Positions 3,279 to 58,182 of a DNA stretch of 64,000 nt are shown in pieces. The DNA is taken from positions 10,354,001 through 10,418,000 of the forward strand of contig CM075980.1 in NCBI GenBank assembly GCA_038087875.1. The letters are read 5' to 3'. The notes under the pieces are model-generated. The model saw nothing but the letters and a program-made list of their open reading frames with translations, was not told the origin of the DNA and did no database searches. This DNA comes from Malacoraja senta. Its lineage: Eukaryota. The first letter of the stretch is position 1, and the number at the start of each line of letters is the position of its first letter. The translations under genes and the position numbers were made by a program.

Positions 3279-3327
3279 ATGTCTTGCTGGATCTCTCTAG
3301 TCTATGCCTTAGCATTTTCCGCAGTTT
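3279..3327 (+). CDS. IgL: Ig light chain cluster 1, leader exon (MSCWISLVYALAFSAV)
   Basis: ATG at 3279, hydrophobic 16 codons + 1 nt, GTGAGT donor at 3328; 125-nt phase-1 intron ending in a pyrimidine tract and AG at 3451-3452. Confidence 0.93.
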
Positions 3328-3452
3328 GTGAGTATTTACTTCAACCGACATAATATTCAATCTCGAGTACGATTAAACCTTTCTATCCATGGCAATTCGG
3401 CTGTTTCTCTGATATAACTTAATATTCTACTTTTTTCTGGTTTGTTTTTCAG

Positions 3453-3797
3453 ATATAAATGCGCAATTTGCAGTAAATCAACCGTCTTCAAAATCCACAT
3501 CTCTGGGGCAGAACGTGGAAATAGCCTGTACCCTGTCTGGCGGCAGTTTAGGTAACAGTGACGTTTCCTGGTACCAGCAGATTCCCGGAACGGTTCCGCG
3601 GTATTTGTTCTACTATTATTCGGGAAGCAGCATTAGCAGAGGCTCGGGAGTTTCGGAACGTTTCTCCGGATCAGTGTCAGGCAACACTGCAACATTGACA
3701 ATATCGAACGTGCAGTCGGGGGACGCAGCGGATTACTACTGTGCTGTGTGGAAAGATGCTTTAATCTTCGGCAAGGGAACGAGGCTGGGTATTGGCA
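3453..3797 (+). CDS. IgL: Ig light chain cluster 1, germline-joined VJ exon
   Basis: Open frame QFAVNQP...IAC...VSWYQQIPG...[25 protein letters not shown] with both V cysteines, Trp and FGxG; V runs straight into J with no RSS; GTAAGT donor at 3798. Confidence 0.96.
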
Positions 3798-3821
3798 GTA
3801 AGTAAAATACCTTCTATCTTT

Positions 3822-4500
3822 GGGTAGACACAAAAAGCTGGAGTAACGCAGCGAGACAGGCAGCATCCCTGGAGAGAAGGGAAGGGTTGTAGGAAGGAAC
3901 TGCAGATGTTGGTTTAAACCGAAGATAAGCACGACAAGCTGGACAGGCAGCATCTCTGTAGGGAATGAATGGGTCTGCAGTTTCTTCCTGCATATTCTAT
4001 CTTTGGGTTATTGACATTGCAGTGAAAAGTAATTGGTTTTCTGTCGCTAATCGATGGTTCAAAGAAAAAGCGTTTAACGCTAATATGTTCAGCGTTCGCC
4101 CAAAGTCGAGTTTCCTTTGGCAAATTATTAGACGTAGCTCTATCAAAGGGCTTGATGCTAGGGCGGCTGTTTGCAATTTTTACACTAAATAAATTAAATA
4201 AAAGGTATTTAAAGCTGATATTTTTTGGCAAATTAGTTGACAACAGCAATGAAAGGATGAAACGGCTGTCCAGCTGTTTTATTATTCTTAATTACTTTGC
4301 GGACGGCGAGCTAACAATTATCAACCCTGGATAAGAATTAGACGGAACGTATGGGAACGGGAAATACATTTGGAGGGACAAGGAACTGCAGATGCTGGTT
4401 TACAAAAAAAGACACAAAGCTCTGGAGTGACTCAGCGGGTAGGGCAGCATCTCTGGTGAACATGGATAGGTACGTTTCGGTTCGGGTCCCTTCTTCAAAT
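3822..4500. mobile_element. Penelope-like short repeat fragments in the J-C intron (about 3822-3980 and 4378-4500; shared with clusters 2 and 3)
   Basis: GAACTGCAGATGCTGG / GCTGGAGT..CTCAGC / GCAGCATCTCTG motif family seen many times in the window; classification by recall. Confidence 0.55.
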
Positions 4501-5173
4501 CAGTTTTGTTTCGTTTGACATCTTATAACGCATTTTGCTTTTGTGCCATTAAGCGAAAGGAATAAGATTCGCTATTCAACTTCAGAAATCTGAGCTGAAT
4601 TATTACTTCAAAGAGAAGAGACGGGTCGAGAAAAAACAAACATATACGTTTCAGCATTAATGTAAATCATATCAACGACTATTTAATATGCGAGAAAACG
4701 GTAAATTTAACGTTGCTGCAAATCTAGTCTGTTCATAGATGGCTAAAACGGCAAAATATTCTTGTCGCTAAAATCCAACCATTAGTAACATTTGGGTATC
4801 TGATCTTAATAAATAAACAGATGAATTAAGGGAAGGTATTTAAAGAAAACTCAAGTTTTAAGCGAGTTTAGTGGAACTTTGGAAGCAATGAAAACCCGTA
4901 ACTGGCTGTAGTGTAAAACACTGTTGTTGTTTTTTTTATTGTAGCTGAAGCCAATGGAAATAATACTCTGGAGATCAATTAAAAACACTTCCGAAATAAT
5001 ATATTTTACGCTGCTGCGTATATTCTGTTCCATTGCCATAAATAGCAGTTATTTTTTGGGGATCTCACTTGGAACGAATGAATCCATGCTATACCAACTG
5101 TATTTTTACAAAGACAATGTTTAACCGAAGCAGTTCTGTTAGCCCTACTAATCTGTGACTTTATTTTAAATAG

Positions 5174-5496
5174 AACCTCAGCCCCCAGCGGTGTCCGTTC
5201 TTGGACCTTCAGCGCAAGAAATGACGGGAAAGGGCACCGCCACCCTTGTGTGTTTGGTGAACGGGTTTAATCCGGGTGCTGTGGAAATTGACTGGACTGT
5301 GGACGGCAGTGCGAGAAGTGATGGCGTTGAAACCAGCCGAATCCAACAAGAGGCGGACAACACGTTCAGTGCGAGCAGTTACCTGACTCTGCCAGCCACA
5401 GTCTGGAACTCACACGAGCTTTACTCCTGTGTGGTTAAACACGAGTCGCGGGCAAGCCCGGTGCAGGGAAACATCGCCAGGTCCGGCTGTCTGTAA
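5174..5496 (+). CDS. IgL: Ig light chain cluster 1, constant exon (lambda/type II-like)
   Basis: TAG acceptor 5171-5173 after a TACTAAT branch-like site; C1-set domain ATLVCLV...W...YSCVVKH, penultimate Cys, TAA. Spliced CDS 49+345+323=717 nt (238 aa). Confidence 0.95.
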
Positions 5497-5710
5497 AACT
5501 TCTAGATTCCAACTAATCAAGCTGAAAAATAGTTTTGCTCCGTCTTTCATTTGTCAAAAAATGGTATAAAAATATTCTCTGTTATCGACTAGCATTTGCG
5601 TTAAAATTGTCATTTGTCTCGCTGTTTGTAAACGTCATTCCATCGAAGCAACTCGTTGTGAATTCAAACGCAAATGTTATTCAATCTGTTAAATGCATTC
5701 CCAAATATCC

Positions 5711-5716
5711 ATTAAA
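5711..5716 (+). terminator. Candidate poly(A) signal ATTAAA of cluster 1 (equivalents 22223-22228, 36475-36480)
   Basis: Variant hexamer about 215 nt after the stop followed by GT-rich sequence; present in all three paralogs. Confidence 0.35.
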
Positions 5717-16060: not shown

Positions 16061-19000
16061 AGACCAAACATTATCCTCAGATAACCCTCACAGAAGCCTC
16101 TTGAGCTTAAGCCTCAATAAACCAATCATAATATTGCCGCTCAACGTACGTTTTCCTTCCGTTTATTGGCTGTTATTTTAACTTCATTTTATTGACTGTT
16201 ATTTAGCCAAATATCCAAGCTGTGACACTTGCCCGCAAATAACGATAGAGGTATTTCTCGATAGAGAAGATTGAACAATATTCAGATAAGCATAACTCTG
16301 AAAAGAAATATATCCTGGACTCTAGTGAGTTAATGTGGAAAACAACTGAAGGGATGGTCGAATTCTCTGTGGCAAAAAAAACAATCAACAGAACAATCAA
16401 TGGTATAAATAAAGGAATATGACTGTGTATGCTACATCAGGGATCAGATCATATGAAATTCAAATATATTGTAAGGAAACCGAAGCTGAGGTTGAGGGCA
16501 CAAACCCTTACTTGCAACACGACAATGGTAGTCCTTACAATTCAGAACCAGACCCAATTCTGCCTACTTCGATTCATGATAGCATATGACCTCTAGTACA
16601 TGCATCATTTTCCTTCTTTGGACAATACACGTTAAAGTAAATACTACTTCGCCAAAATAGCTCTAATATCATTTGTGATCACAGGCCTGTGAATATGCGT
16701 GGGAGATAAAATAATATCTAGGAGTGCTTACTGTGCCAGTGCTAGACCCACTGACAATAAATGAAGCCGGGTAAGAGGATGAAGCATCAGTGGGCTGATA
16801 TTTTGAGGGTCCGAAACCATTGTATTTTACCCTTAAATTATGCACAGGAAGGGGTAAGAATAGTCCCGAAATTTGGTTTCTGAATTGCAAGAAGGTGGAT
16901 TTCAGTAACATTGTAAGAAGTATATTCTGGAATGGTATTCCAAGTGGGTTGGAGCTGTATCAATTCCAGGGAAGGTTGTCCTTACCGATTACAGAATCCA
17001 CATCACATCCCTATATTTAACGTATTAAGGATCATAGTCTTCTGGCATTTCATCTTTACCTGAAATTGCACGGCCACATAATCTCCGGGTTAACTACGGG
17101 AACAGATTGCTTCTCGACCAGGCTGCCCTGGTAATGCTACCCCTCGGTGAGCCATCACAATGCAACCGAGCAATTTGGAAGCGCACTTTGCTTACAGGAA
17201 ACATTCCACAAAGAAGTGAATGTTTGTTAGTCATTAACCCCGTTATTCTTCAGCTGTGTCTTCTATGCAATGTACATCTTCCCTGCGTAAAATGATAAAA
17301 ACTATATTTAAATACGTAATCTTATTTATTTTAGAGAATATCTAGATGGCTTTAATACTTCATTTCCATTAATGTTGTTAATGTGATAAACGTCTACTTC
17401 ATTCTCAAAGTGCTAGAGTAATTCAGCAGAACGGGCAGCATCTTTGGAGTACATGGATATGTTATGTTTTTGATGGGGACCCTTTTACAGAGTCTAAAGA
17501 AGGTTCGCGATCCGAAATCTCCTTACGAGATGATCTACTCCAGCATTGTGCGTTTTACTGAATATTCCAGCATCTCACAGTCGCATCTAATTGAACGTCA
17601 CAACCCCGTTCTGTTCAACATTTCATTACAAATGTTAATCTTTTGAGACTGTCAANNNNNNNNNNNNNNNNNNNNNNNNNNNNNNNNNNNNNNNNNNNNN
17701 NNNNNNNNNNNNNNNNNNNNNNNNNNNNNNNNNNNNNNNNNNNNNNNNNNNNNNNNNNNNNNNNNNNNNNNNNNNNNNNNNNNNNNNNNNNNNNNNNNNN
17801 NNNNNNNNNNNNNNNNNNNNNNNNNNNNNNNNNNNNNNNNNNNNNNNNNNNNNNNNNNNNNNNNNNNNNNNNNNNNNNNNNNNNNNNNNNNNNNNNNNNN
17901 NNNNNNNNNNNNNNNNNNNNNNNNNGATGCTCGCACGTAGAGTTACACTATGGCTCAAGCAGAAATAATATTCTGCAAAACTCCAACAAGACGAGTAGAA
18001 CAGCTCTACTACCCTATCATCTGCTTTTGTTTCCAAAACCAAAAGTTCCATCAATACGCCAAATTTTAATCAAATTTGATAGCTAGATGAGCATTTATAT
18101 GCACTGGTAAGCTTATTGAATCACTAAAGTATTCTGGCGATAGGACCCAAATCCTGCTATTAGAAAGGGATTTCTAAGAAATGGGCCGAACAATCGCAAA
18201 GCATAGTAATATATTTCGCACTGAACATTGGCTGTGACTTGTCTAGCAAGAGAGGTGCTCCTATGAACACCCTTTGCTCTTATCCTGATTAGGCACGGAG
18301 GTGTTGTCCGTGTGTCCTAGGCATAATTGTAATGCATTTTGCATATTGCCAAGAGAGTCGTGGCAATATATTGTTACTTGGGAGGGGATGAATATTTAGT
18401 GTGAGAAAAGTATCAAAGAGCGGATTACTTTCTTCTGGATGTAGTTCAACTACTGGCTTTTTGTATTACCTGCATGGAGAATTGTCCAATGTATCCAGTT
18501 TATGTAAAGCGTTCAAGTGGAGAGATCAGAGGATAACTTAGCAAAGGCAACGCACATTGGTAATAGGCTAGGTACGGGTGTCATGGTTGCGCACTGAAAC
18601 ATATTCTTATGTCATCATTTCAACTAAAATATTGTTAATGCCAGTTAAATGGTGCATAATCATGCCACGGTATCACAGGAATGATTCCCCTTTTCCAACA
18701 AAGATAGCATTTCCGAAGTAGCGAGGAGCAAAACAATTTCGGAAACAATGTTTGAGACATTGATGCCTTTGCTTGACCTGTTTGCATGTCATTGATCTGA
18801 GGGCTTTTATGAGATGCGAGTATTAACTGTCCAGGCACATCAGCAGAACAGCCAGGTCTCCTTTGATTAATTACCAGCGAATCGTTAGTCCGAATGTCAA
18901 CATTCTGAAAATGTAGACTTTTTTTTACTGTATTTTCTTGTTCATATCCGTTAGCACTGATTCACCTGGTGTTACTATCCTGCAGGGATAATCCATAAAG

Positions 19001-19549: not shown

Positions 19550-19595
19550 AAATTGTACCGAGGTACAAATGTACCGAGATAAATTGTACCGAGAT
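19550..19595 (+). repeat. Three tandem copies of AAA(T)TGTACCGAG upstream of the cluster 2 promoter (also 33944-33990)
   Basis: Direct reading. Confidence 0.7.
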
Positions 19596-19643
19596 ATTCG
19601 ACACCAAATCCTTAATTACCTTGGAAATAATTTGACACAGGAA

Positions 19644-19742: not shown

Positions 19743-19803
19743 CGACCCGGAGAGAAACACTGAGAAGAGACTTCACCTGGCGTTCTCCACTCAATTAATT
19801 ACA

Positions 19804-19852
19804 ATGTATTGCTGGATCTCTCTAGTCTATGCTTTAGCGTTTTCCGCAGCTT
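19804..19852 (+). CDS. IgL: Ig light chain cluster 2, leader exon (MYCWISLVYALAFSAA)
   Basis: Paralog of 3279-3327; ATG 19804, GTGAGT donor 19853, 124-nt intron. Confidence 0.93.
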
Positions 19853-19976
19853 GTGAGTATTTACTTCAACCGACATAATATTCAATCGCGAGTACGATTA
19901 AACCTTTCTATCCATGACAATTCTGCTGTTTCTCTGATATTAGTTAATATTCTACTTTTTCTGGTTTGTTTTCCAG

Positions 19977-20315
19977 ATATAAATGCGCAAGTTGCACTAA
20001 ATCAGCCGTCTTCAAAATCCACATCTCTGGGACAGAACGTGGAAATACCATGTACCGTGTCTGTCGGCAGTTTAGGTAGTAGCGTCGTTTCCTGGTACCA
20101 GCAGATTCCTGGAACGGTTCCGCGGTATTTGTTCTACTATTACTCGAGCATTTACAGAGGCTCGGGAGTTTCTGAACGTTTCTCCGGATCAGTGTCAGGC
20201 AACACTGCAACATTGACAATATCGAACGTGCAGTCGGGGGACGCAGCGGATTACTACTGTGCTGTGTGGAAAGATGCTTTAATCTTCGGCAAGGGAACGA
20301 GGCTGGGTATTGGCA
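19977..20315 (+). CDS. IgL: Ig light chain cluster 2, germline-joined VJ exon
   Basis: CAG acceptor; QVALNQP...IPC...WYQQ...[21 protein letters not shown]; in-frame 6-nt CDR2 deletion relative to cluster 1; GTAAGT donor 20316. Confidence 0.96.
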
Positions 20316-21688
20316 GTAAGTAAAATACCTTCCATCTCTGGGTAGATACAAAAAGCTGGAGTCACGCAGCGAGACAGGCAGCATCTCTGGAGAGAAGGAA
20401 AGGGTTGTAAGAAGGAACTGCAGATGTTGGTTTAAAACGAAGATAAGCACGACAAGCTGGACAGGCAGCATCTCTGTAGGGAATGAATGGCTCTGCAGTT
20501 CCTTCCTGCATATTCTATCTTTGGGTTAATGATATGGCAGTGAAAAGTAATTGGTTTTCTGTCGCTAATCGATGGTTCAAAGAAAAAGCATTTAACGCTA
20601 ATACGTCGAGTTTCCTTTGGCAAATTATTAGACGTAGCTCTATCAAAGAGCTTGATGTTAGGCCGGCTGTTTGTATTTTTTACACTAAATAGCTAAAATA
20701 AAAGGTATTTAAAGCAGGTATTTTTTTAATTCCCCGCCACGATCGAGTCTTTTTTGGCAAATTAGTTGACAACAGCAAGGAAAGGACGAAACGGCTGTCC
20801 AGCTGTTTTATTATTCATAATTACTTTGTGGACGGTGAGCTAACAATTATCAAACCTGGATAAGAATTAGACCGAACGTAAAGAAACTGGAAATAACTTT
20901 GGATGGACAAGGAACTGCAGATGCTGGTTTACAAAAATAGGCACACAGCTCTGGAATGACTCAGCGGGTAGGGCAGCATCTCTGGTGAACATGGATAGGT
21001 AAGTTTCGGTTCGGGTCCCTTCTTCAAATCAGTTTTGTTCCGTGTGACACCTTATAACGCATTTTCCATGTGTGCCATTAAGCGAAAGGAATAAGATTCG
21101 CTATTCAACTTCAGAAATCTAAGCTGAATTATTACTTCAAAGAGAAGAGACGGGTCGAGAAAAACAAACATATACGTTTCAGCATTAATGTAAATCATAT
21201 CAACGACTAATTAAAACGGTAAATGTAACGTGACTGCAAATCTAGTCTGTTCATTGATGGCTAAAACGGCAAATATTCTTGTCGCTAAAATCCAACCATT
21301 AGTAACATTTCGGTATCTGGTCTTAATAAATCAACAGATGAATTAAGGGAAGGTATTTAAAGAAAACTAAAGTTTCAAGCGCGTTTAGTGGAACTTAGGC
21401 TGCAATGAAAACCCGCAACTGGCTGTCGTGTAAAATAATGTTTTTTTTAATTGTTTCTGGAGCCAATGGAAATAATACTCTGGAGATCAATTAAAAACAC
21501 TTCCGAAATAATATATTTTACGCTGCTGCGTATATTCTGTCCCGTTGCCATAAATAGCAGTTTTTTGGGGGGGATCTCACTTGGAACGAATGAATCCATA
21601 CTATACCAACAGTATTTTTTAACAAAGTTAATGTTTTAACCAAAGCAGTTCTGCTAACCCTACTAATCTGTGACTTTATTTTAAATAG

Positions 21689-22011
21689 AAGCTCAGCCCC
21701 CCGCGGTGTCAGTCCTTGGACCTTCAGCGCAAGAAATGACGGGAAAGGGCACCGCCACCCTTGTGTGTTTGGTGAACGGGTTTAATCCGGGTGCTTTGGA
21801 AATTGACTGGACTGTGGACGGCAGTGCGAGAAGTGATGGCGTTGAAACCAGCCGAATCCAACAGGAGGCGGACAACACGTTCAGTGCGAGCAGTTACCTG
21901 ACTCTGCCCGCCACAGTCTGGAACTCACACCAGCTTTACTCCTGTGTGGTTAAACACGAGTCGCGGGCAAGCCCGGTGCAGGGAAACATCGCCAGGTCCG
22001 GCTGTCTGTAA
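21689..22011 (+). CDS. IgL: Ig light chain cluster 2, constant exon
   Basis: TAG acceptor 21686-21688; 3 amino-acid differences from cluster 1 C; spliced CDS 711 nt (236 aa). Confidence 0.95.
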
Positions 22012-30265: not shown

Positions 30266-33200
30266 CCAGCCTCAATGTTGTCTGTTCTGCTAGTTCCACT
30301 AGCCTCCATCTCTTTGACAACAAGACCAGGTTGTTCTGCATAGCAAATATAAAGTGACAGGCCAAACCTTATCCTCAGATAACCCTCACAGAAGCCTCTT
30401 GAGCTTAAGCCTCAATAAACCAATCTTAATATGGCCGCTCCACTTACGTTTACCTTCTGTTTATTGGCTGTTATTTTAACTTCATTTATTGACTGTTATT
30501 TAGCCAAATAACCAAGCTGCGACACTTGCCCGCAAATAACGATAGAGGTATTTCTCGATAGAGAAGATTAACCAATATTCAGATAAGCATAACTCTGAAA
30601 AGAAATATCTCCTGGACTCTAGTGAGTTAATGTGGAAAACAACTGAAGGGATGGTCGAATGCTCTGTGCCAAAAAAAAAACAATCAACAGAACAATCAAT
30701 AGTATAAATAAAGGAATATGACTGTGTATGTTACATCAGAGATCAGATCATATGAAATTCAAATATATTGTAAGGAAACCGAAGCTGAGTTTCAGGGCAC
30801 ACACCCTTACTTGCAACACGACAGTGGTATTCCTTACAAATCAGAACCAGACCCATTTCTGCTTTCTGTGTCAGTGCTAGACCCACTGACAATAAATGAA
30901 GCAGGGTAAGAGGATGATATTTTGGGGGTCCGAACCCATTGCATTTCCCCTTAAAGTATGCATAGGAAGGGGTAAGAATATTCCCGAAATTAGGTTTCTG
31001 AATTGCAAGAAGGTCGATTTCAATAACATTGTAAGAATTAAATTCTGGAATGGTATTCCTAGTGGGTTGGAGCTGTATCTTCGCTAAAAGGACCGCATCA
31101 ATTCCAGAGAAGGTTCTCCTTAACGATTACAGAGTCCACACCACATCCCTATATTTAACGTATTAAGGATCATAGTCTTCTGGCCTTTCATCTTTACCTG
31201 AAATTGCACGGCCACATAATCTCCGGGATAACCTACGGGAACAGATTGCTTCTCGACCAGGCTGCCCTGGTAATGCTACCACTCGCTGAGCCATCACAAT
31301 GTATGCAGTGTTGCTGCAACCGAGCAATTTGGAAGCGCACTTCGCTTACAGGAAACATTCCACACAGAAGTGAAGGTTTGTTAGTCATTAACCCCGTTAC
31401 TCTTCAGCTGTGGCTTCTATGCAATGTACATCTTCCCTGCGTAAAACGATAAAACTATATTTAAATACCTAATCTTATTTATTTTAGAGAATATCTAGAT
31501 TGCTTTAATACTTCACTTCCATTAATTTGGTAATGTGATAAACGTGTACTTCATCGTCAAAGTGCTAGAGTAATTCAGCAGATCTGGCAGCAACTTTTTA
31601 GTACATGGAAATGTAATGTTCTTGGTGGGGACCCTTTTCCAGAGTCTAAAGAAGGTTCGCGATCCGAAATGTCCATACGAGACCAGCATTGTGCGTTTTA
31701 CTGAAGATTCCAGCAAACCACAGTCGCATCTCATTCAACGTCACCACCCCGTTCTGTTCAACATTTCATTACAAATGTTAGTCTTTTGAGACTGTCAACN
31801 NNNNNNNNNNNNNNNNNNNNNNNNNNNNNNNNNNNNNNNNNNNNNNNNNNNNNNNNNNNNNNNNNNNNNNNNNNNNNNNNNNNNNNNNNNNNNNNNNNNN
31901 NNNNNNNNNNNNNNNNNNNNNNNNNNNNNNNNNNNNNNNNNNNNNNNNNNNNNNNNNNNNNNNNNNNNNNNNNNNNNNNNNNNNNNNNNNNNNNNNNNNN
32001 NNNNNNNNNNNNNNNNNNNNNNNNNNNNNNNNNNNNNNNNNNNNNNNNNNNNNNNNNNNNNNNNNNNNNNNNNNNNNNNNNNNNNNNNNNNNNNNNNNNN
32101 NNNNNNNNNNNNNNNNNNNNNNNNNNNNNNNNNNNNNNNNNAATGCTCGCACGTAGAGTTACACTATGGATCAAGCAGAAATAATATTCTGCAAAACTCC
32201 AACAAGACGAGTAGAACAGCTATACTACCCTATCATCTGCTTTTGTTTCCAAAACCAAAAGTTCCATCAATACGCCAAATTTTAATCAAATTTGATAGCA
32301 AGGTGAGCATTAGTATGCACTGTTAAGCTTATTGAATCACAGAAGTATTCTGGCGATAGGACCCAAAGCCTGCTAATAGAAAAGGATTTCCAAGAAATGG
32401 GCCCAACAAGCGCAAAGCATAGCAATGTATTTCGCACTCAACATCGGCTGTGTCTAGCAAGACTTGTCTAGCCTGAGAGGTGCTCCAATGCACACCCTTT
32501 CCTCGTATCCTGATTAGGCACGGAGGTATTGTCCGTGTGTTCTAGGCATAATTGTAATGCAGTTTGCGTATTGCCAAGAGAGTCGAGGCAATATATTTTT
32601 ACTTGGGAGGGGATCAATATTGAGAGTGAGAAAATTATGAAAGAGCGGATTACTTTATTCTGGATGTAGTTCAACTACTTGCTTTTTGTTTTACCTGCAT
32701 GGGGAATTGTCCAATGTATCCAGTTTATGTAAAGCGTTCATGTGGAGAGATCAGAGGATAACTTAGCAAAGGCAACGCACGTTGGTAATAGGCTGGGTAC
32801 GGGTGTCATGGTTGCGCACTGAAACATATTCTGATGTCATCATTTCAACTAAAATATTGTTAATGCCAGTTAAATGATGCATAATCATGCCACGGTATCA
32901 CAGGAATGATGCCCCCGGTCCAACAGAGATAGCATTTCCGAAGTACCGAGGAGTAGAACAATTTCGGAAACAATGTTTGATACATTGATGCCTTTGCTTG
33001 ACCTGTTTGCATGTCATCGATCTGAGGGTTTTTATGAGATGCGAGTATTAACTGTCCAGGCACATCAGCAGAAGAACCCGGACTCCTTTGATTAATTACC
33101 AGCGAAATCGTTAGTCCAAATGTCCAAATGTCAACATTTTGAAAATTTAGACTTTTTTTTACTGTATTTCCTTGTTCCTAGTCGTTAGCACTGATTCACC

Positions 33201-34198: not shown

Positions 34199-36269
34199 AT
34201 GTCTTGCTGGATCTCTCTAGTCTATGCGTTAGCGTTTTCCGCAGCTTGTGAGTATTTACTTCAACCGACATAATATTCAATCTCGAGTACGATATAACCC
34301 TTCTATCCATGACAATTCTGCTGTTTCTCTGATATTAGTTAATATTCTACTTTTTTCTGGTTGTTTTTCAGATATAAATGCGCAATTTTCACTAAATCAG
34401 CCGTCTTCAAAATCCACATCTCTGGGACAAAACGTGGAAATAGCCTGTACCCTGTTTAGGTGGAAGCATCGTTTCCTGGTACCAGCAGATTCCAGGAACG
34501 GTTCCGCGGTTACTGTTCTACTATTGGTCGGGCAGCAGCATTTACAGAGGCTCGGGAGTTTCTGAACGTTTCTCTGGATCAGTGTCAGGCAACACTGTAA
34601 CATTGACAATATCGAACGTGCAGTCGGGGGACGCAGCGGATTACTACTGTGCTGTGTGGAAAGATGCTGTAATCTTCGGCAAGGGAACGAGGCTGGGTAT
34701 TAGCAGTAAGTAAAATACCTTCTATCTTTGGGTAGACACAAAAAGCTGGAGTAACGCAGCGAGACAGGCAGCATCTCTGGAGAGAAGGAAAGGGTTTGCA
34801 GTTCCTTCCTGCATATTCTAGCTTTGTGTTATTGATATAGCAGTGGAAAGTAATTGGTTTTCTGTCGCCAATCGATGGTTCAAAGAAAAAGCTTTTCACG
34901 CTAACATGTTCAGCATTCGACCAAAGCCGAGTTTCCTTTGGCACATTATTAGACGTAGCTCGGTCAAATGGCCTGATGCCAGGCTGGCTGTTTGTATTTT
35001 TTTACACTAAATGGCTAAAATAATAGGTATTTAAAGCTGATATTTTTTTTAATTCCCGGCCACGATCGAGTCTTTCTGGGCAAATTAGTTGACAACAGCA
35101 ATGAAAGGACCAAACGGCTGTCCAGCTGTTTTATTATTCTTAATTACTTTGCGGACGGCGAGCTAACAATTATCGAACCTGGATAAGAATTAGACCGAAC
35201 GTAAGGAAACGGGAAATAACTTTGGAGGGACATGGAACTGCAGATGCTGGTTTACAAAAAAAGACACAAAGCTCTGGAATGACTCAGCGGGTAGGGCAGC
35301 ATCTCTGTTGAACATGAATAGGTAAGTTTCGTTTTGGGTCCCTTCTTCAAATCAGTTTTGTACGTGTGGCATTTTGCTGTTGTGCCATTAAGCGAAAGGA
35401 ATAAGATTCGCTATTCAACTTCAGAAATCTGAGCTGAATTATTATTTAAAGAGAAGGGACGGGTCGAGAAAAACAAACATATACGTTTCAGCATTAATGT
35501 AAATCATATCAACGATTATTTATAATGCGACAAAACGGTGAATTTAGTGTTGCTGCAAATCTAGTCTGTTCATAGATGGCTAAAACGGCAAAATATTCTT
35601 GTCGCTAAAATCCAACCATTAGTAACATTTTGGTATCTGGTCTTAATAAATGAACAGATGAATTAAGGAAATGTATTCCAACAAAACTAAACTTTTAAAC
35701 GAATTTAGTGGAACTTTGGCTGCAATGAAAACCCGCAATTGGCTGTCGGGTAAAACATTCGTGTTTTTAATTGTATGCGTATATTCTGTCCCATTGCCAT
35801 AAAATAGCAGTTATTTTTTGGACATCTCACTTGGAACGAATGAATCCATGCTATACCAAATGTATTTTAAACAAAGATAATGTTTTAACCGAAGCAGTTC
35901 TGCTAGCCCTACTAATCTGTGACTTTATTTTAAATAGAACATCAGCCCCCTGCGGTGTCCGTCCTTGGACCTTCAGCGCAAGAAATGACGGGAAAGGGAA
36001 CCGCCACCCTGGTGTGTTTGGTGAGCGGGTTTAATCCGGGTGCTGTGGAAATTGAGTGGACTGTGGACGGCAGTGCGAGAAGTGATGGCGTTGAAACCAG
36101 CCGGATCCAACAAGAGGCGGACAACACGTTCAGTGCGAGCAGTTTCTTGACTCTGCCAGCCACAGTCTGGAACTCACACGAGCTTTACTCCTGTGTGGTT
36201 AAACACGAGTCGCGGGCAAGCCCTGTGCAGGGAAACATCGGCAGGTCCGGTTGTCTGTACAACTTCTAG
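34199..36269 (+). pseudogene. IgL: Ig light chain cluster 3, frameshifted germline-joined VJ-C gene (leader 34199-34247, VJ 34372-34705, C 35938-36269)
   Basis: Splice sites intact, but the VJ exon is 334 nt against 345 in cluster 1: 11-nt deletion in CDR1 (about 34451-34452), shifted frame stops at 34565; C stop TAA changed to TAC adds YNF. Confidence 0.88.
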
Positions 36270-39900: not shown

Positions 39901-41116
39901 GGCTACTCAAGGTAGATAAGGAGTACCAATTTAAGACAAAGAGAACCACATATGCTGGATTCACCAGCTGCTGGAGTACTCGGCGGGTCAGGTAGCAATT
40001 GTGAAATAAATGGATAGGCGACGTTTAGGTCAGATGCTGCGTGACCCGTCGAGATATCTTTGCCCATTCCCCATTCCTCATATTTAAAGGTAACATTCAC
40101 ACAGCTTTTCACGGCTATTCGCCAAAATGCAACATTTTCTTCAGAATCTCCGATTTTATTTGACCTGCAAAGTGCCATGGATTTGTCGGACCAAAGCTTT
40201 TCATCCAAAGTGGTCGGGGTCTCCTTGTATGCCAGGCCAACGCCAATTTAATCTTCACTGTTTATTGAACCATATAAGATTTTTAAAGGGTTTGAACACG
40301 CCTAGGCAGGAAACATGTTCCCGATGTTGGGGGAGTCCAGAACCAGGGGCCACAATTTAAGAACAAGGGGTAAGCTATTTAGAACGGAGATGAGGAAACA
40401 CTTTTTCACACAGAGAGTTGTTAGTCTGTGGAATTCTCTGCCTCAGAGGGCGGTGGAGGCCGGTTCTCTGGAAACTTTCAAGAGATTGCTAGATAGGGTT
40501 GAAGATAGCGGAGGCAGGGGATATGGGGAGAAGGCGGGAACGGGGTACTAATTGTGGGTGATCAGCCATGATCTCATTGAATGGCGGTGCTGGCTTGAAG
40601 GGCCGTATGGCCTACTACTGCATCTATTGTCTTTTGGTTATTGTCTAATACACAGCCATGCCTATCGCTAACTACCTCATTCTCCTTCAAATGGAGTAAA
40701 TCTCAATGAATTATCTCCAATAGTTTCCTACCACTGACGTGAGTCTCATCGTGCCTCTACTTCCCTGGATTCTTTCTACGTCTCAATCAACAAAGGAACA
40801 ACTGGTCATTTTCCTGTTCCCTTGGTGCTCGCCTGTGGCTAGTGAAGCACCAATGTGTCTTGTCAGGACCCCTGGAATCACCTCTCGCTTCCCTCAATAA
40901 ACTGGGATAGATACCANNNNNNNNNNNNNNNNNNNNNNNNNNNNNNNNNNNNNNNNNNNNNNNNNNNNNNNNNNNNNNNNNNNNNNNNNNNNNNNNNNNN
41001 NNNNNNNNNNNNNNNNNNNNNNNNNNNNNNNNNNNNNNNNNNNNNNNNNNNNNNNNNNNNNNNNNNNNNNNNNNNNNNNNNNNNNNNNNNNNNNNNNNNN
41101 NNNNNNNNNNNNNNNN

Positions 41117-50463: not shown

Positions 50464-53455
50464 TATTTAAATCTTTTTATTTGAATTTCACAGCAATTTG
50501 CATACATGCTATGATAACAGACAGTGACAGTCAAGGCATAATTGTGCAACAGTATGTAAGCGACCCTCAAAGCCCTTACCCTTACCCACCTTCAACCCAC
50601 CCGAATCAGGTCGGAACCAAACGGGGACAAACAACACTCACATACGTACACATCCACACAAATATGGTAAGATAAACGAAACAAAAAGTACTTAAAAAAA
50701 ATAAAAATAAAAATAATTTTAAAAAAATAAAAAAATAAAAAGATAAATAAAAAAATAAAAAAATTGGGGTCACTACTAACAGTAAATAAGTAAGTAATTA
50801 AATAAATAAGTGTGGGGAGGGGGGTTTAAGGGGAGAGCAGCTGCAGTAGAGCAAAACAATGGTGGAGAGCACTCAATCCTCTTCCGAGTCCGGGGACAAG
50901 TTGAGAGAGTTAACAAGTTCCAAGAAAGGGTTCCATGTATCTAGGAATGTCTTGGTAGAGCCTGTGAGAGAGAACCTAAGTTTTTCAAGCTTTAAATTGT
51001 AAAGCACCTCCTTAATCCAACGGGCGTGTGTCGGGGGACAGGTGAGCCTCCAGTTAAGCAAGATCAGTCTCCGGGCTAACAAAGTTGTAAAAGCTAGGAC
51101 CCGTTTCACCGCAACAGAGAGGTTGGTGTTAGGAGGGGTACCGAAAATGGCTGACATTGGGTTTGGAGGAATAGTCTGGCCGTAGGCTCTGCTTATCAAG
51201 TCCAAAGCACTCCTCCAAAAGGCTGCTAGCTTAGGGCAAGACCAAAACATATGGCTATGGTTGGCAGGGGATTGATTACATCTGTTGCAGGTGTCCCTAA
51301 CAGCGGGGTAAATTGTAGATAATCTTGCATTTGTGTAGTGGACTTTGTGAAGGACTTTGCATTGGATTAGGCCATGACGGGCACATATGGAGGAAGAATG
51401 GATCAAATCCAAGGCAGAGTCCCATTGCTTGTCTGTTAGTTTCGTATTCAGCTCACCCTCCCACGCAGCTTTTAATGAGGTATGAAGTTTCAATATAACC
51501 GACCCTAGCAAATTATACAAAATAGAGATGCATTTCTTCCGGTTGGGATCTAGAGCGAAGATGGTATCGGTCAGGGTTTCAGGGGGGCGATTTGGGAAAT
51601 GGGGGAATGTCTTCTTCACAAAATCTCTAATCTGGATAAAACCAAAAAGGTGGGAGTTTGGGAGGCTGTAGTTGGACGAGAGCACCGCAAAGGACGAAAA
51701 GATGCAATCCTTGTATAGGTTTTTGATACTACTGATACCGTTGCTATGCCAGGTTTTGAATGCGTGGTCTGTACTTGAAGGTTTAAAGATGTGATTTTTA
51801 AGCAGTGGGGTCAAGATGGAAGGGCCTTGTAAACCGAAGTTTTTCCTGAGTTGACTCCATATCTTGAGCGAGAGGGACGCAATTGGGCCTGCACCCACAG
51901 ATGTTATAGGAAGGGGGAGTTGGGAGCATAGGACAGACCGCAACGGGAGACGTGAACTCGCCATTTCCATGTATACCCAGTCGGTAGGTGGTCGCAATCA
52001 TCATTCATCCAATACAGGAGTTTTTTCAAGTTAGCTGCCCAATAGTATCGCCTAAAGTCAGGAAGTGCCAAACCGCCGTCACTCTTAGGAGACTGCAGTA
52101 TCGCCTTTCGGATTCTAGCCGGTTTGCCACCCCATAAAAATTTAGATATTGTCCTTTCTAATTTATCAAAAATAGATTTAGTGATAAGTATAGGGACGTG
52201 CTGGAAAAGATACAGGAATTTGGGTAGGACGACCATCTTGACCAGATTTATCCGGCCCACGAGGGATAGCGGTAAAACTGACCAGCGGTCAAAATCTCTT
52301 TCGACTTTCTCAACCAGAGGCAGAAAGTTTGTGCGGAACATATCAGATAAGGGTGTTGTGATAAAAACGCCGAGATAGCGAAACCCGTCCTCTGCCCATT
52401 TGAATGAGGTTAAAGAGCGAGGGAGCTGCTTAGCCAATGAGTTAATCGGTAATAGCTCACTCTTTTGGTAGTTAAGTTTATAACCAGAATACGCACCAAA
52501 CCGTTCTAAAATATTCGTAATCACAGGGCGAGAACTGACTGGGTTCGAGATGTACAGGAGCAGGTCATCTGCATACAATGAGACTTTATGAGTTGTGTCG
52601 AACTGTGTAATACCTTTGAAGCCCTTCTCTGAGCGTAACCAGACCGCCAGGGGTTCTATCGCGACAGCAAACAGGAGTGGTGATAACGGGCAACCCTGTC
52701 TGGTACCTCTCTGAAGGGGGAAGTGGGGCGACAGTGTGCCGTTTGTTTGTACTGAGGCCACCGGGGACGAGTATAATAGCCTGACCCAAAGAATAAAACT
52801 GTTACCGAGGCCAAACCTGTCCATCGCCTCATAATGTCGAAAGCTTTTTCGGCATCGAGGGAGACCACTATCTCCGGGGTCTCACTACTCGGTGAATGGA
52901 TGATGTTAAGGAGACGCCTAGTATTGTGGGAAGACTGTCGGCCTGGTATGAACCCTGTTTGATCTAACGAGATAATAGAGGGCATCACTCGTTGAAGACG
53001 GAGCGCAAGGGCTTTAGAGAGGATTTTGAGGTCCACATTCAGGAGTGAAATTGGTCTATAGCTACTACAAAGCAGGGGATCTTTCTCCTTTTTAAGAATT
53101 AGGGAGATAGTAGCCCACGACAAGGTGGGCGGTAGGCGACGATGTAAAAACGCCTCATTGTACATATCTCTCAGGACTGGTGCGAGGAGAGCAGAGAAAG
53201 CTATGTAATATTCTACAGTGAAGCCGTCAGGGCCGGGTGACTTTCCGCTTTGCAGCGATGTGATGGCTGCTTGGACCTCAGCAACAGTTATGGGACCACC
53301 CAAGTCTCCCGTGGCTTCATCGTCAATTCGGGGAAACGTCATACAACTGAGCATGTCTCCTGCAGTGGTAGGACAGTCGGAAGCGTATAGTTCAGCGTAG
53401 AATTTAGCAAATGCTTCATTAATTCTAAGAGGATCAGTATGAATCTCCACTAAGC
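50464..53455 (-). mobile_element. 5'-truncated L1-clade LINE with most of the RT, 12-bp TSD
   Basis: KSPGPDG, YRPISLLN, LDAEKAFD, RQGCPLSP, YADD, zf-RVT; small frameshifting deletion near 52830; TSD TCGTGGAGTTTT at 50452-50463 and 53456-53467, empty site reads TT/AAAA. Confidence 0.92.
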
Positions 53456-55512: not shown

Positions 55513-55518
55513 TTTATT
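55513..55518 (-). terminator. Candidate poly(A) signal AATAAA of cluster 4
   Basis: AATAAA on the minus strand about 180 nt after the stop. Confidence 0.5.
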
Positions 55519-55697
55519 CATGAACGATATTCGTTCGAAAGAACTACATTTAAGGCGAACAAGTCATAAAAAATCAAGGTTTCAACTATAAATGGCATTT
55601 CTTTATGAAAATTCCGAAAGACAAAGACGAACTTTGTCACATGGAAGAACCCAATGGTGATTAGCTAACTTTGGGGAGTCAGCTCACGTTTCAAACA

Positions 55698-56020
55698 TCA
55701 GATACAGCTAGATCTCATGATATTTGTCTTCAGCGGGTCTGACCGACTCTGGTGTTTAACCACACAGGAGTAAAGATTGTGTAAGTTCCAGTCTGAGGCT
55801 GTCAGAGTCAGGAAACTGCTGAGACTGAACGTGTTGTCCTTATCCTGCTGGATCGGGCTGGTCTCAACGCCGCTACTTTTTGCACTGCCGTCAACGCTCC
55901 ACTCAACGGCCACCGAGCCCGGGTTAAAGCCGTTCACCAAGCACACCAGGGTGGCGGTGCCCTTTGAGGTAACTTCATCGGCTGAGGGCGGGAGGACCGT
56001 CACGATCGGTGCACGAGGAG
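55698..56020 (-). CDS. IgL: Ig light chain cluster 4, constant exon
   Basis: CAG acceptor 56023-56021; (A)PRAPIVTVLPPS...ATLVCLV...YSCVVKH...RSSCI-stop; spliced CDS 717 nt. Confidence 0.95.
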
Positions 56021-57592
56021 CTGTTTAATAAGAAGTCACAGTTAATTGGAGAATTGCTGTCGTTGAGATATCATTATTTGCCGAATATACATCTCATTAA
56101 AGCACTCATTTATTCATTTATAGAAATAAGTCGTTTTATTCTCGACCTATTTCAAACCATTACAGTTCGTTTTTTTAAATTGGGTAAACAATAAATAAAG
56201 TACGTGAAAGCACCTAGAATAGTTAATTTTCTGTCTGCCCTATGCATAAACTGCGGGAAAGCATCTGTGATAGATCATGGCTGCACTGTTTTATAAAACT
56301 GAATACATTATTATAACTTTTATAATGTCATTTTACTACACGTCTTCGGCTTTACATTTATTTAAATATATCAGCAGATATAAACGATTCGCGGTTTCGA
56401 AAGTAATAATAACAGATTTAAACTTATTTAAGTGCCCGCACCCTTTGAAATGGAGGGTGACGCTATTAAGTTCGGCAAAAATATATAGAAACTAGTCTTC
56501 GAAAGCCACGGTCGACATTCGCTGATGTCGTTCGCAATCAAGGATGACATTGTAGTTGGAATATGCATTTATATTTGAAATGCACTGCTGTGTCCATGAA
56601 AGGCTGCTCTACGTATTAAACAACATTTCTGAAATGTGCGAAATTTTCGCCTTTCGCATTTCGCATTTAAACCCGTCAACCGGAATTTTGACAGTGTTGA
56701 ATATGAACGTTGCTGACCCCCCGTTACCCAAGCAATATCCTTTCATATCTGGACAATCACTGCGTATATTTCCGCAATTTATTGGACGAACCCTATTCCG
56801 TGCAACTTCAGTTCTACATCAACCCTCATCTAATTGACGATTTCAAAATCCGAGAGAAATGACACCATTCGCATTAGGAAGTACGCGATCATTATTGGAC
56901 GGGAAGCAAAATGGAAAATTGAAGATTTGCATCACATTTTCGAGTACATTAAATTCATGGTGCGGTCCTAAGTAATTCTGTGAACTGTAAAAAAAAATAT
57001 TGCTTGGAATCGCAGCTGCGCGATTTCTAATCTAATATTGACGCTGTAAGGATTAGTCTTGCCTGGTCATGGTTGTTTTGAAATGCTTTGAAGGCGGAAT
57101 ATGGCTCTGATCAGCGAAAACAATTATATACGTTATTTTCGTAATGCAACTGTAGTATAATGGGCTACAGAGTGAAACACTTGCTTGAATATTAGACAAA
57201 ACAACATGGAACAAATAATTCCTTCGCATCGCGGCACCGTGCAACCAGACCTCAATGCCTAAAAGGGGATCCAAGTAACTACTGTCCTAAGCGAGTTAAT
57301 TCGCTCAAAGTCGCTACAGTCCCGTGGTTCCCTGGGCACAGGATGCTTTTGTCGAGAAATTGATTGTTCGTCTGTAAAAGCTCAAGACAAAGCATTAGCT
57401 CGCTTTTGCAGTCATTTCACTGAGCTATGTCCAAATGAACTCGGAACATCTGTATAGCAAGATCGCACTATCTGCACTGAAATACAGCTGGCCCAATCAC
57501 GTATAATGTGAACTCACGACGTTAAATCAAGCAATATCTGCATTAAAATAAAAAGAAAATAGCGTGCTGTCCGAAGAATATATTTTACTTAC

Positions 57593-57937
57593 CGCCAATA
57601 CCCAGCCTCGTTCCTTTACCGAAATGTAAACCACTATCCCATTTGGCACAGTAATAGTCCGCAGCATCCACCGATTGAACGCTAGATATTGCGAATACTA
57701 GAGAGCTGCCTGACACCGAGACGGAAAAACGGTCTGGAATGTCCGTGCCTTTATAAATGCTGCCACTGGTAGTATGGTAGAATAGATACTTGGGAGTTTT
57801 GCCAGGAATCTGTTGGTACCACGAGACATAGTTAGCGCCTGAACTGGAACCCGATATGGTGCAGGATATTTGCATTTGCTGTCCCGTGGAGGCGGACATC
57901 GAAGGCGGCTGACTTACTGTAACTGCCGCGCTTAAGT
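57593..57937 (-). CDS. IgL: Ig light chain cluster 4, germline-joined VJ exon (diverged V)
   Basis: AVTVSQPPS...ISC...WYQQIPG...[25 protein letters not shown], 345 nt, no RSS, GTAAGT donor at 57592. Confidence 0.96.
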
Positions 57938-58057
57938 CTGAGAAAAGAGAAATATCAGAAAAAAAGAAAATTGTTAAGTTTGTTGAAGTGTGGGAGATAA
58001 CCCCAAATTAATGGTGAATAGAAATAAGTATAATGTCCAGGAAAGTAAAATACTCAC

Positions 58058-58106
58058 AAACTGCGCAAAACACCAACGCTCCGACCACACGGATCCAATA
58101 AGACAT
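58058..58106 (-). CDS. IgL: Ig light chain cluster 4, leader exon (MSYWIRVVGALVFCAV; an in-frame ATG at 58112 could add MK)
   Basis: Same length and phase as the other leaders; GTGAGT donor at 58057; 120-nt intron; CAG acceptor 57940-57938. Confidence 0.9.
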
Positions 58107-58182
58107 TTTCATTAACCGAATGAGCTCCGATCGGGCGGCAGTTTCCAGGACAAGTGACGTGTAATCTTGCTCTCTGGCTCTC

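What the first reader, a model, noticed from the sequence alone, without database searches (positions are those of the whole stretch)
3279..58112. Germline-joined Ig light-chain family with a mixed signature: lambda-like C, split leader, long CDR2, 8-residue CDR3
Seen: all four genes have V fused in frame to J with no RSS, a 120-125 nt intron splitting the leader, CDR1 of 13 aa, CDR2 of 9-11 aa (YYSGSSISRGS, YYSSIYRGS, HTTSGSIYKGT), no FR3 insertion, and CDR3 of 8 aa. Established: cartilaginous fish have cluster-type IgL with germline-joined members. Recalled, not verified: the C resembles shark type II/lambda C, type II genes were described with the leader contiguous with V, and H.TSGSIY.GT resembles type I/sigma-cart (NS5) CDR2. 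Inference: this may be an uncatalogued lambda-related subgroup or a V/C mosaic lineage with a fixed, innate-like light-chain repertoire.
Basis: partly seen in the sequence, partly recalled or inferred. Interest (0 to 1): 0.8.

Follow-up and report, generated by a model that had tools for sequence, protein, structure and literature searches.

The report
Pre-joined skate lambda light-chain genes
These are ordinary germline-joined lambda (type II) antibody light-chain gene clusters of a skate, but their V domains form a sister family to the classically described type II genes, with a long CDR2 and a fixed 8-residue CDR3.

Summary
The window holds four leader / VJ / C immunoglobulin light-chain miniclusters at the stated coordinates. 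Three are intact (236, 238 and 240 aa). The third is broken by an 11-nt deletion in CDR1.

- **Confirmed:** split leader (introns of 120-125 nt), fused VJ without RSS, and CDR lengths of 13, 9-11 and 8.
- **Gaps:** none of the assembly gaps lies inside a gene. However, the fourth gene lies beyond the gap at 40917-41116, in a block that is a 99.96% inverted copy of DNA 200 kb upstream. Its place and orientation are therefore unproven.
- **Locus:** the genes belong to a 1.16-Mb lambda locus with at least 29 clusters; every cluster whose V was read is germline-joined, as reviews report for lambda in cartilaginous fish.
- **V domains:** they form a well-supported clade beside, not inside, classical type II (little skate cDNA AAA59379.1, sandbar shark, horn shark, ratfish). 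Classical type II has a short CDR2 and a 2-residue FR3 insert.
- **C domains:** they are lambda and intermix with classical type II C. Monophyly of this family's C is rejected (AU p = 2e-6), which points to C homogenisation inside the locus.
- **Split leader:** it is not distinctive, because classical clusters here have one too.
- **Relatives:** RefSeq already models this family as "lambda-1 light chain-like" in skates, rays and two sharks.
- **Expression:** RNA-like contigs from related species show the predicted splicing.

The scan noted the same family in neighbouring windows of this genome. The family is real but modestly new.

The parts
3279..3327 (+). G1 leader exon (49 nt, ends in phase 1)
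   Evidence: ATG at 3279, donor GTGAGT at 3328. The same leader peptide, including the split Tyr codon, is present in RefSeq model P0001.
3328..3452 (+). G1 leader intron, 125 nt, GT..AG
3453..3797 (+). G1 germline-joined VJ exon (CDR1 TLSGGSLGNSDVS, CDR2 YYSGSSISRGS, CDR3 [19 protein letters not shown])
   Evidence: One open exon, Pfam V-set E 1.5e-17, no RSS heptamer.
5174..5496 (+). G1 C-lambda exon with stop; ATTAAA at 5711-5716
   Evidence: Pfam C1-set E 5.6e-25; acceptor AG at 5172-5173; poly(A) signal.
19804..22011 (+). G2 whole gene: leader 19804-19852, intron 124 nt, VJ 19977-20315 (CDR2 two codons shorter, YYSSIYRGS), C 21689-22011; 236 aa, intact
34199..36269 (+). G3 pseudogene: leader 34199-34247, VJ 34372-34705 with an 11-nt deletion in CDR1 (frameshift, stop at 34563-34565), C 35938-36269 with the normal stop lost (TAA to TAC)
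58058..58112 (-). G4 leader exon (55 nt; second in-frame ATG at 58106)
   Evidence: RNA-like contigs of related species join 58058 to 57937.
57938..58057 (-). G4 leader intron, 120 nt
   Evidence: Skipped exactly in contigs of runs X23 and X27.
57593..57937 (-). G4 germline-joined VJ exon (CDR2 HTTSGSIYKGT, CDR3 AKWDSGLH)
   Evidence: Pfam V-set E 1.2e-14. V is 90% identical to little skate XP_055511140.1.
55698..56020 (-). G4 C-lambda exon with stop; AATAAA at 55518-55513
   Evidence: Pfam C1-set E 1.4e-26. The J-C joint 57593 to 56020 is seen in contigs of X23, X25 and X27. Poly(A) signal.
40917..41116 (.). Assembly gap that separates the G1-G3 tandem array from the inverted block holding G4
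   Evidence: N run. Everything from 41117 to 64000 is a 99.956% inverted copy of C4:10186640-10209519.
17656..17925 (.). Assembly gap 1.9 kb upstream of G2, intergenic
   Evidence: its flanks are collinear with the flanks of the gap at 31800-32141.
31800..32141 (.). Assembly gap 2.1 kb upstream of G3, intergenic, at the same position in the repeat unit

Best explanation
The window is the distal part of a skate Ig lambda (type II) light-chain locus of the minicluster type.

**Anatomy.** Each gene is a self-contained unit: promoter, leader exon, short intron, an exon in which V and J are already fused in the germline, a 1.2-1.6 kb intron, and a C-lambda exon.

**How it most likely works**
- The gene is transcribed in B cells.
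- Two introns are spliced out.
- The 236-240 aa precursor loses its signal peptide.
- The chain pairs with an Ig heavy chain through the penultimate Cys.
- No RAG cut is needed, so CDR3 is set by the genome.
- Diversity comes from differences among clusters, mostly in CDR1 and CDR2, and probably from somatic hypermutation.

**Status of the four genes.** G1, G2 and G4 are intact. G3 is a pseudogene.

**Where the family sits.** The V domains belong to a second lambda V family with two subfamilies, G1-like and G4-like. It has a long CDR2 (IMGT 7), no FR3 insert and a conserved 8-residue CDR3. In the V tree it stands beside the classical type II V family of the same locus. The C exons of the two families have been homogenised within lineages.

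**Shown:** gene structure, intact frames, family membership, and splicing of orthologues in related species.

**Inferred:** expression in this animal, heavy-chain pairing and hypermutation.
For: - **Structure and domains:** exon structure and canonical splice sites; V-set and C1-set domains.
- **Splicing:** RNA-like contigs of related organisms skip exactly 57938-58057 and 56021-57592 and leave no depth in the introns. One 792-nt contig spans leader, VJ and C.
- **Orthologue:** the little skate orthologue XP_055511140.1 has the same exon plan, with a 121-nt leader intron.
- **Locus:** the genome has at least 29 lambda-type C exons on C4 between 9.28 and 10.44 Mb. Every V read next to them is fused to J.
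- **Literature:** reviews state that all lambda/type II genes are germline-joined in every cartilaginous fish studied (PMC5192425, PMC4279169).
- **V tree:** the long-CDR2 family is a clade at 100/98; classical type II, including AAA59379.1, is a clade at 100/98; all lambda together have 99/88.
- **C identity:** 62-76% to classical type II C, against 42-49% to sigma-like and sigma-2-like C.
- **Conserved features:** the family's CDR lengths hold across 34 sequences from about 10 species. The CDR3 AVWKDALI is identical in this skate and in two stingrays.
Against: - No RNA run of this organism was found, so expression of these particular copies is not shown.
- The AU test on 116 V columns cannot reject a grouping of this family with the sigma-2-like V genes (p = 0.33). 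It also cannot choose between classical type II and tetrapod lambda as the sister group (p = 0.50).
- No true kappa or lambda-2 reference sequences could be obtained for the trees.
- The sigma-2-like and sigma-like references are labelled only by their CDR lengths and their joined or split state.
- G4 may be a duplicated haplotype contig.
Confidence: 0.87

Rival explanations
1. A cross-isotype mosaic: a V domain of sigma-2 (type I / sigma-cart) ancestry became attached to a lambda C, creating a separate lineage or isotype.
For: - IMGT CDR1/CDR2 lengths of 8/7 equal the invariant sigma-2 pattern (PMC5985310, Table S5).
- The CDR2 / early-FR3 motif resembles the sigma-2-like genes of this genome. 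HWADGSISRGTGVTDRF (L006) matches HTTSGSIYKGT at 6 of 11 positions and YYSGSSISRGS at 5 of 11.
- The AU test does not reject a V grouping with the sigma-2-like genes (p = 0.33).
Against: - The ML V tree puts the family inside lambda (99/88) and the sigma-2-like genes outside.
- V identity is 31-44% to sigma-2-like, against 44-55% to classical type II and up to 58% to a mammalian lambda V.
- FR3 length matches tetrapod lambda, not sigma-2-like.
- A CDR2 of 7 lies within the published lambda range.
- The clusters sit inside the lambda locus, next to classical type II clusters.
Confidence: 0.05
2. The fourth gene (G4), as placed in this window, is an assembly artefact: a second haplotype or redundant contig of the cluster at C4:10.19 Mb, scaffolded inverted next to a gap. 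On this reading the window really holds three genes of one subfamily. This does not compete with the biological reading of the gene itself.
For: - Window 41117-64000 is 99.956% identical (6 mismatches and 2 gaps in 22,884 nt) to C4:10186640-10209519, inverted.
- The copy begins exactly at the gap 40917-41116.
- G4 and L023 are 100% identical over 3961 nt.
- Such divergence is in the range expected between haplotypes (my own knowledge).
Against: - The copy continues for 4 kb beyond the window at a lower identity of 99.33% and then ends without a gap.
- A further minus-strand G4-like cluster follows at C4:10438062, only 95-98% identical to the same source block. This shows that real inverted duplications exist at this end of the locus.
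Confidence: 0.35
3. The array is a decaying, non-functional relic of pre-joined genes.
For: G3 is frameshifted and has lost its stop. L024 has a stop in V, and L012, L016 and L032 are defective or lack a V.
Against: - G1, G2 and G4 have intact frames, splice sites and poly(A) signals.
- CDR3 and the frameworks are conserved across skates, rays and sharks.
- Orthologues are present as spliced RNA-like contigs in three runs from two related organisms.
Confidence: 0.04

Closest known systems
Classical type II / lambda (NS3) light-chain clusters of cartilaginous fish: little skate AAA59379.1, ratfish AAA59371.1, sandbar shark AAA86749.1 and AAC59643.1, horn shark WKK30313.1
   Same: - Same locus in this genome (C4, 9.28-9.54 Mb).
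- Same minicluster plan, with a split leader and germline-joined VJ.
- Same C-lambda type, 62-76% identical and phylogenetically intermixed.
- Same Kabat CDR1 length of 13.
   Different: - V is only 44-55% identical and forms a separate clade with full support.
- Classical V has a CDR2 of 6-7 (IMGT 3) against 9-12 here (IMGT 5-7).
- Classical V has a 2-residue FR3 insert (SVDSSINQMHL) that is absent here.
- Classical CDR3 is 9-12 residues and varies between clusters; here it is 8 residues and nearly invariant.
- The classical leader intron is 93-94 nt, against 120-125 nt here.
RefSeq models 'immunoglobulin lambda-1 light chain-like': XP_032898932.1 (Amblyraja radiata; near-orthologue of G1) and XP_055511140.1 (Leucoraja erinacea; near-orthologue of G4)
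   Same: - V is 95% and C 93% identical for G1; V is 90% and C 89% identical for G4.
- Same length, the same CDR2 type (identical string for G1; HTTGGSIYKGT against HTTSGSIYKGT for G4), the same CDR3 length (identical AKWDSGLH for G4; AVWKSACI against AVWKDALI for G1) and the same exon plan.
   Different: These are automatic predictions without a described family name. One member (XP_078251645.1) is even labelled kappa-like.
Type I / sigma-2 (sigma-cart, NS5) germline-joined light chains of skates
   Same: Germline-joined in skates (PMC2192082 abstract). IMGT CDR1/CDR2 of 8/7. Partial similarity of the CDR2 motif to the sigma-2-like genes of this genome.
   Different: - V is 31-44% and C 42-47% identical.
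- These genes lie on different chromosomes or contigs (C6, C5841).
- They fall outside the lambda clade in the V tree.
- The sigma-2 label of my reference sequences is itself unverified (one search returned only automatic names).
Mammalian lambda V subgroups with a long CDR2 (human IGLV4, IGLV5, IGLV9, IGLV11; from my own knowledge, not tested here)
   Same: They are lambda V domains whose IMGT CDR2 has 7 residues followed by xxGSGVPxRF. The published lambda range is 3-7 (PMC5985310).
   Different: They are rearranging segments with RSS. No orthology was tested. The best mammalian match found here was a Vlambda1-type chain with a short CDR2 (58% identity).

Membership tests
Ig lambda (type II/NS3) light chain of cartilaginous fish | Two-domain light chain (V-set plus C1-set) with a signal peptide | tested here: met
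   Pfam; spliced products of 236-240 aa.
Ig lambda (type II/NS3) light chain of cartilaginous fish | Minicluster organisation with V and J joined in the germline and no RSS | tested here: met
   Single VJ exon in all four genes; no RSS heptamer. Reviews report that all lambda genes are joined (PMC5192425, PMC4279169).
Ig lambda (type II/NS3) light chain of cartilaginous fish | C domain groups with lambda C | tested here: met
   62-87% identity to classical type II C and intermixed with it in the C trees; 42-49% to the other isotypes of this genome.
Ig lambda (type II/NS3) light chain of cartilaginous fish | V domain groups with lambda V | tested here: inconclusive
   The ML tree gives a lambda clade at 99/88 that includes this family. 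The AU test cannot reject a grouping with sigma-2-like V (p = 0.33). No kappa or lambda-2 references were available.
Ig lambda (type II/NS3) light chain of cartilaginous fish | IMGT CDR1 of 3-9 and CDR2 of 3-7 residues | tested here: met
   8/7 (G1, G4) and 8/5 (G2), by my own numbering of the sequences, set against PMC5985310 Table S5.
Classical type II V family (AAA59379.1 and relatives) | V sequence inside the clade of named type II sequences, with a short CDR2 and the FR3 insert | tested here: not met
   Separate clade at 100/98; 44-55% identity; CDR2 of 9-12 against 6-7; no FR3 insert.
Sigma-2 (type I / sigma-cart) | CDR1 of 8 and CDR2 of 7 (IMGT) | tested here: met
   G1 and G4 are 8/7. 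This is length only and overlaps the lambda range.
Sigma-2 (type I / sigma-cart) | V and C group with sigma-2 | tested here: not met
   C is 42-47% identical and forms a separate long branch. V lies outside in the ML tree, although the AU test is not decisive. The reference label is unverified.
Sigma (type IV) | CDR2 of 9-10 and CDR1 of 4-7 (IMGT) | tested here: not met
   8/7 here. The sigma-like V genes of this genome (L002, L003) are split and 38-40% identical.
Lambda-2 (teleost 'lambda') | CDR1 of 5-7 and CDR2 of 2-3 (IMGT) | tested here: not met
   8/7 here (PMC5985310). No lambda-2 sequence was available for a tree.
Kappa (type III/NS4) | CDR2 of 3 residues; V and C group with kappa | tested here: inconclusive
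   The CDR2 length does not fit. Every named non-chondrichthyan hit was lambda. No kappa-like C was found in this genome, so no tree test was possible.

The most novel reading that the evidence does not exclude
Batoids and squalomorph sharks may carry a second, ancient lambda V family, pre-joined for hundreds of millions of years, that has not been described in the literature.
- Its 8-residue CDR3 is almost frozen. AVWKDALI is identical in a skate and two stingrays, and AKWDSGLH is identical in eight of the nine G4-like copies read here (the ninth is a pseudogene) and in two other skate genera.
- Its long CDR2 has the same length as that of sigma-2.
- Its C exons are kept like those of classical type II by exchange within the locus.

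Such a chain could serve as a semi-invariant, innate-like or preferred-partner light chain. No member was seen in galeomorph sharks or chimaeras, which would explain why it was missed.
Probability: 0.4. Interest if true: 0.45.

Novelty: new member of a known kind. Interest (0 to 1): 0.3.

Why it matters
Germline-joined lambda genes in cartilaginous fish are textbook knowledge, so the basic finding is ordinary.

What adds something is the locus-level picture:
- One 1.16-Mb locus holds two deeply diverged lambda V families.
- Every cluster whose V could be read is pre-joined.
- One family has a near-invariant junction that is conserved across batoids.
- The C exons evolve in concert across the two families.

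This gives a concrete system for two questions. Why do pre-joined genes persist beside a working RAG system? And does a fixed CDR3 mark a preferred heavy-chain partner or an innate-like specificity?

It also warns annotators in two ways. Automatic names (lambda-1-like, kappa-like) hide at least three distinct light-chain lineages. And part of this locus may be duplicated in the assembly.

Tried and rejected
- **Naming references.** The third protein search, with a sigma-2-like gene of this genome, returned only eight batoid RefSeq models with automatic lambda-like names. The sigma-2 label therefore stays unverified, and no kappa or lambda-2 references were obtained.
- **Papers.** Criscitiello and Flajnik 2007 and Flajnik 2024 are not held. 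Only the abstract of Anderson 1995 is held. Five literature searches found no description of a second lambda V family. A further search for a description of the leader intron in sandbar shark lambda genes also found nothing useful.
- **RNA of this organism.** None was found. Reads were laid on G4 with runs of related species. As a result, neither the G3 frameshift nor the copy number of the G4 block could be checked against reads.
- **Kappa in this genome.** The next-best C1-set hits were IgM constant exons, not light chains.
- **First C tree.** It was poorly resolved and disturbed by a row without a C domain. I rebuilt it without the long rows.
- **Rejected readings.**
  - Retro-copied cDNA: the introns are present.
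  - Surrogate light chain (VpreB / lambda5): these are full V-J-C chains with a normal C-terminal Cys.
  - Lambda-2: the CDR lengths do not fit.
- **Not run.** A structure prediction and the protein-representatives search, because neither would change the verdict.

Full report
**1. What is in the window**

Reading the four places and splicing them in a script gives four light-chain miniclusters.
- G1 (+): leader 3279-3327, VJ 3453-3797, C 5174-5496. Product 238 aa.
- G2 (+): 19804-19852, 19977-20315, 21689-22011. Product 236 aa.
- G3 (+): 34199-34247, 34372-34705, 35938-36269.
- G4 (-): 58112-58058, 57937-57593, 56020-55698. Product 240 aa.

All introns are GT..AG. The leader introns are 125, 124, 124 and 120 nt. 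The J-C introns are 1376, 1373, 1232 and 1572 nt. Pfam finds V-set and C1-set domains.

V runs into J ([10 protein letters not shown]) inside one exon, and there is no RSS heptamer. Poly(A) signals lie 180-215 nt after the stops.

G3 is not in frame. An 11-nt deletion in CDR1 shifts the frame and gives a stop at 34563-34565. Its normal stop after C has also changed from TAA to TAC.

**2. The gaps**

N runs lie at 2623-2805, 2871-3070, 17656-17925, 31800-32141 and 40917-41116. None lies in an exon or intron of the four genes, so no frame depends on them.

A self-comparison shows that G1-G3 are three tandem units of 14-16.5 kb, 87-95% identical. The gaps upstream of G2 and G3 sit at the same place in the unit and have collinear flanks.

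The gap at 40917-41116 is different. Everything beyond it (41117-64000, with G4) is 99.956% identical, inverted, to C4:10186640-10209519, about 200 kb upstream. The copy runs on to C4:10422182 at 99.3% identity, about 27 kb in all. G4 equals the cluster at C4:10.19 Mb over 3961 nt without a single difference. This is either a very young inverted duplication or a misplaced haplotype contig.

A further minus-strand cluster at C4:10438062, 95-98% identical to the same source block, shows that older inverted copies do exist here. I could not settle the question.

**3. Expression and splicing**

No RNA run of this organism was found.

I laid RNA-like runs of related organisms on G4 at 85% likeness. 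Their contigs cover only the exons and skip exactly 57938-58057 and 56021-57592. One 792-nt contig carries leader, VJ and C. The single letter reported between the two sides of the J-C joint is the relatives' GAT (Asp) where this genome has GCT (Ala).

The genomic locus of the little skate orthologue XP_055511140.1 has the same plan, with a 121-nt leader intron.

**4. The locus**

The window is G000:C4:10354001-10418000. A search with the G1 C exon finds at least 29 lambda-type C exons on C4 between 9.28 and 10.44 Mb. I fetched the 4 kb before each of them and read the V regions. Every V found is fused to J. Three groups appear:
- **F1:** 15 clusters at 9.28-9.54 Mb, in two subtypes. CDR2 of 6-7, a 2-residue FR3 insert, a CDR3 of mostly 9-11 that varies between clusters (6 in one cluster), and J FG(R/K/T)GTKLNL.
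- **F2:** G1-G3, L022, L030 and L029. CDR2 of 9-12 and CDR3 of 8.
- **F3:** G4, L023-L028 and L031. CDR2 of 9-11. CDR3 is AKWDSGLH in every copy except the pseudogene L024.

Defective copies also occur: G3, L024 (a stop in V), L016, L012 and L032.

**5. Which group is the described type II?**

A search with G2's V found only RefSeq models named 'immunoglobulin lambda-1 light chain-like', and one named 'kappa-like'. They come from Amblyraja, Leucoraja, Rhinoraja, Hypanus, Hemitrygon, Mobula, Pristis, Pristiophorus and Heptranchias. After them come tetrapod lambda chains. The clusters I read held no classical GenBank entry.

A search with an F1 V found the classical sequences:
- little skate AAA59379.1, clustered with XP_055511526.1;
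- ratfish AAA59371.1 and AAA59368.1;
- sandbar shark AAA86749.1 and AAC59643.1;
- horn shark WKK30313.1;
- dogfish and elephant shark cDNAs.

XP_051887747.1, the sawfish lambda reference used in PMC12227049, is also F1. The described type II is therefore F1, and the window's genes are a different V family of the same locus.

**6. Trees**

*V tree (92 rows, 116 columns).*
- F2+F3 is a clade at 100/98.
- F1, including the chimaeras, is a clade at 100/98.
- F1 and F2+F3 join at 98/75.
- All lambda together, including tetrapod lambda, have 99/88.
- The sigma-2-like and sigma-like V genes of this genome lie outside.

*AU tests on V.* These show the limits of so short an alignment. Holding F2+F3 together with sigma-2-like V costs 7.4 log-likelihood units (p = 0.33). 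Holding it with tetrapod lambda costs 0.7 (p = 0.50).

*C trees.* The C domains of F2+F3 are intermixed with F1 C, and holding them together is rejected (p = 2e-6).

*Identities.*
- G1 C is 74-80% identical to F1 C of this genome but only 67% to G4 C. G1 V is 58% identical to G4 V and 48-53% to F1 V.
- In Heptranchias, the two families differ by 47-48% in V but only 13-15% in C.

The simplest reading is concerted evolution of the C exons inside the lambda locus, with two old V families kept apart. This is a V/C mosaic only in that weak, within-isotype sense.

**7.

*Split leader.* The F1 clusters also have one: a 46-nt exon and a 93-94-nt intron. It encodes MA(A/E)WVWVLALVTCFH, closely matching (14 of 15 residues) the leader of the classical cDNA (MAVWVWVLALVTCFH). 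It does not distinguish this family.

*Long CDR2.* By IMGT numbering the genes are 8/7 (G1, G4) and 8/5 (G2). The published ranges (PMC5985310) are:

| Isotype | CDR1 | CDR2 |
|---|---|---|
| lambda | 3-9 | 3-7 |
| sigma-2 | 8 | 7 |
| sigma | 4-7 | 9-10 |
| lambda-2 | 5-7 | 2-3 |
| kappa | 6-12 | 3 |

The lengths therefore fit both lambda and sigma-2.

*Resemblance to sigma-cart CDR2.* The sigma-2-like joined genes of this genome (L005 on C6, L006 on C5841) do share part of the motif. HWADGSISRGT matches HTTSGSIYKGT at 6 of 11 positions. Overall, though, they are 31-44% identical in V and 42-47% in C.

*Conservation.* Across 34 sequences of the family, CDR1 is 13 in 31, CDR2 is 9-12, and CDR3 is 8 in 30. 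AVWKDALI is identical in this skate and in Hypanus and Hemitrygon. The join and the junction sequence are therefore old and conserved.

**8. Verdict**

These are lambda (type II) germline-joined light-chain clusters, a known kind (PMC5192425 and PMC4279169 state that all lambda genes are joined in every species studied).

Their V family is real, old and distinct from the classical one. Within the literature I could reach it is not described, but RefSeq already predicts it in many species. The scan's own notes flag the same family in neighbouring windows.

I rate it a new member of a known kind, of modest interest. There are two caveats for anyone using this window: G3 is broken, and G4 may be an assembly duplicate.

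Noticed in passing
window 41117-64000 and C4:10186640-10209519 (L040-L042); continues to C4:10422182 (L044): A block of about 27 kb is an inverted copy, 99.3-99.96% identical, of DNA 200 kb upstream. It starts exactly at an assembly gap. It is either a very recent inverted duplication or a misplaced haplotype contig.
   Followed up: partly
window 2623-3070, 17656-17925, 31800-32141: All three tandem units have unread letters in the same region, roughly 0.2-2.1 kb upstream of the leader. Something there, perhaps a repeat, resists assembly in every copy.
   Followed up: partly
window 3071-3278, 19504-19803, 33899-34198, 58113-58412: No Ig octamer (ATTTGCAT or its complement, one mismatch allowed) within 200-300 nt upstream of any leader, apart from one 1-mismatch site at -222 of G4. 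All four genes share an ATTGG box and a GGTGAC..GTCAT block. About 160 nt of upstream sequence aligns between G1-G3 and G4 as part of a roughly 700-nt alignment at 65-66% identity.
   Followed up: partly
L005 (C6:33384000-33393000) and L006 (C5841:1313000-1322000): Two germline-joined VJ-C clusters of another light-chain lineage. CDR1/CDR2 are 8/7 and C is 42-47% identical to lambda. They are probably sigma-2 / type I, yet RefSeq names their relatives lambda-1-like. Only two such C exons were seen, far fewer than the 89 type I clusters reported for little skate.
   Followed up: partly
L002-L004 (C2460:9000-54500): Sigma-like clusters with unjoined V (long CDR2, short CDR1). No kappa-like C exon was found anywhere in the genome; the next-best C1-set hits are IgM constant exons.
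   Followed up: partly
window 50873-53450 (-), 41685-42311 (-), 29038-29994 (-), 13955-14371 (+): The DNA between clusters is filled with fragments of non-LTR retrotransposon reverse-transcriptase ORFs (Pfam RVT_1 and zf-RVT).
   Followed up: yes
window 20130-20160 (G2 CDR2) compared with 3612-3648 (G1): G2 differs from G1 mainly in CDR1 and by a clean 2-codon deletion in CDR2. FR3, CDR3 and J are identical in protein. Differences among paralogues are concentrated in the V-encoded loops.
   Followed up: partly
L007-L017 (C4:9.28-9.46 Mb): In the classical type II clusters, CDR3 differs in length (9-11) and sequence from cluster to cluster, although all are pre-joined. This contrasts with the frozen CDR3 of the window's family. 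It may reflect many separate joining events or diversifying selection.
   Followed up: no
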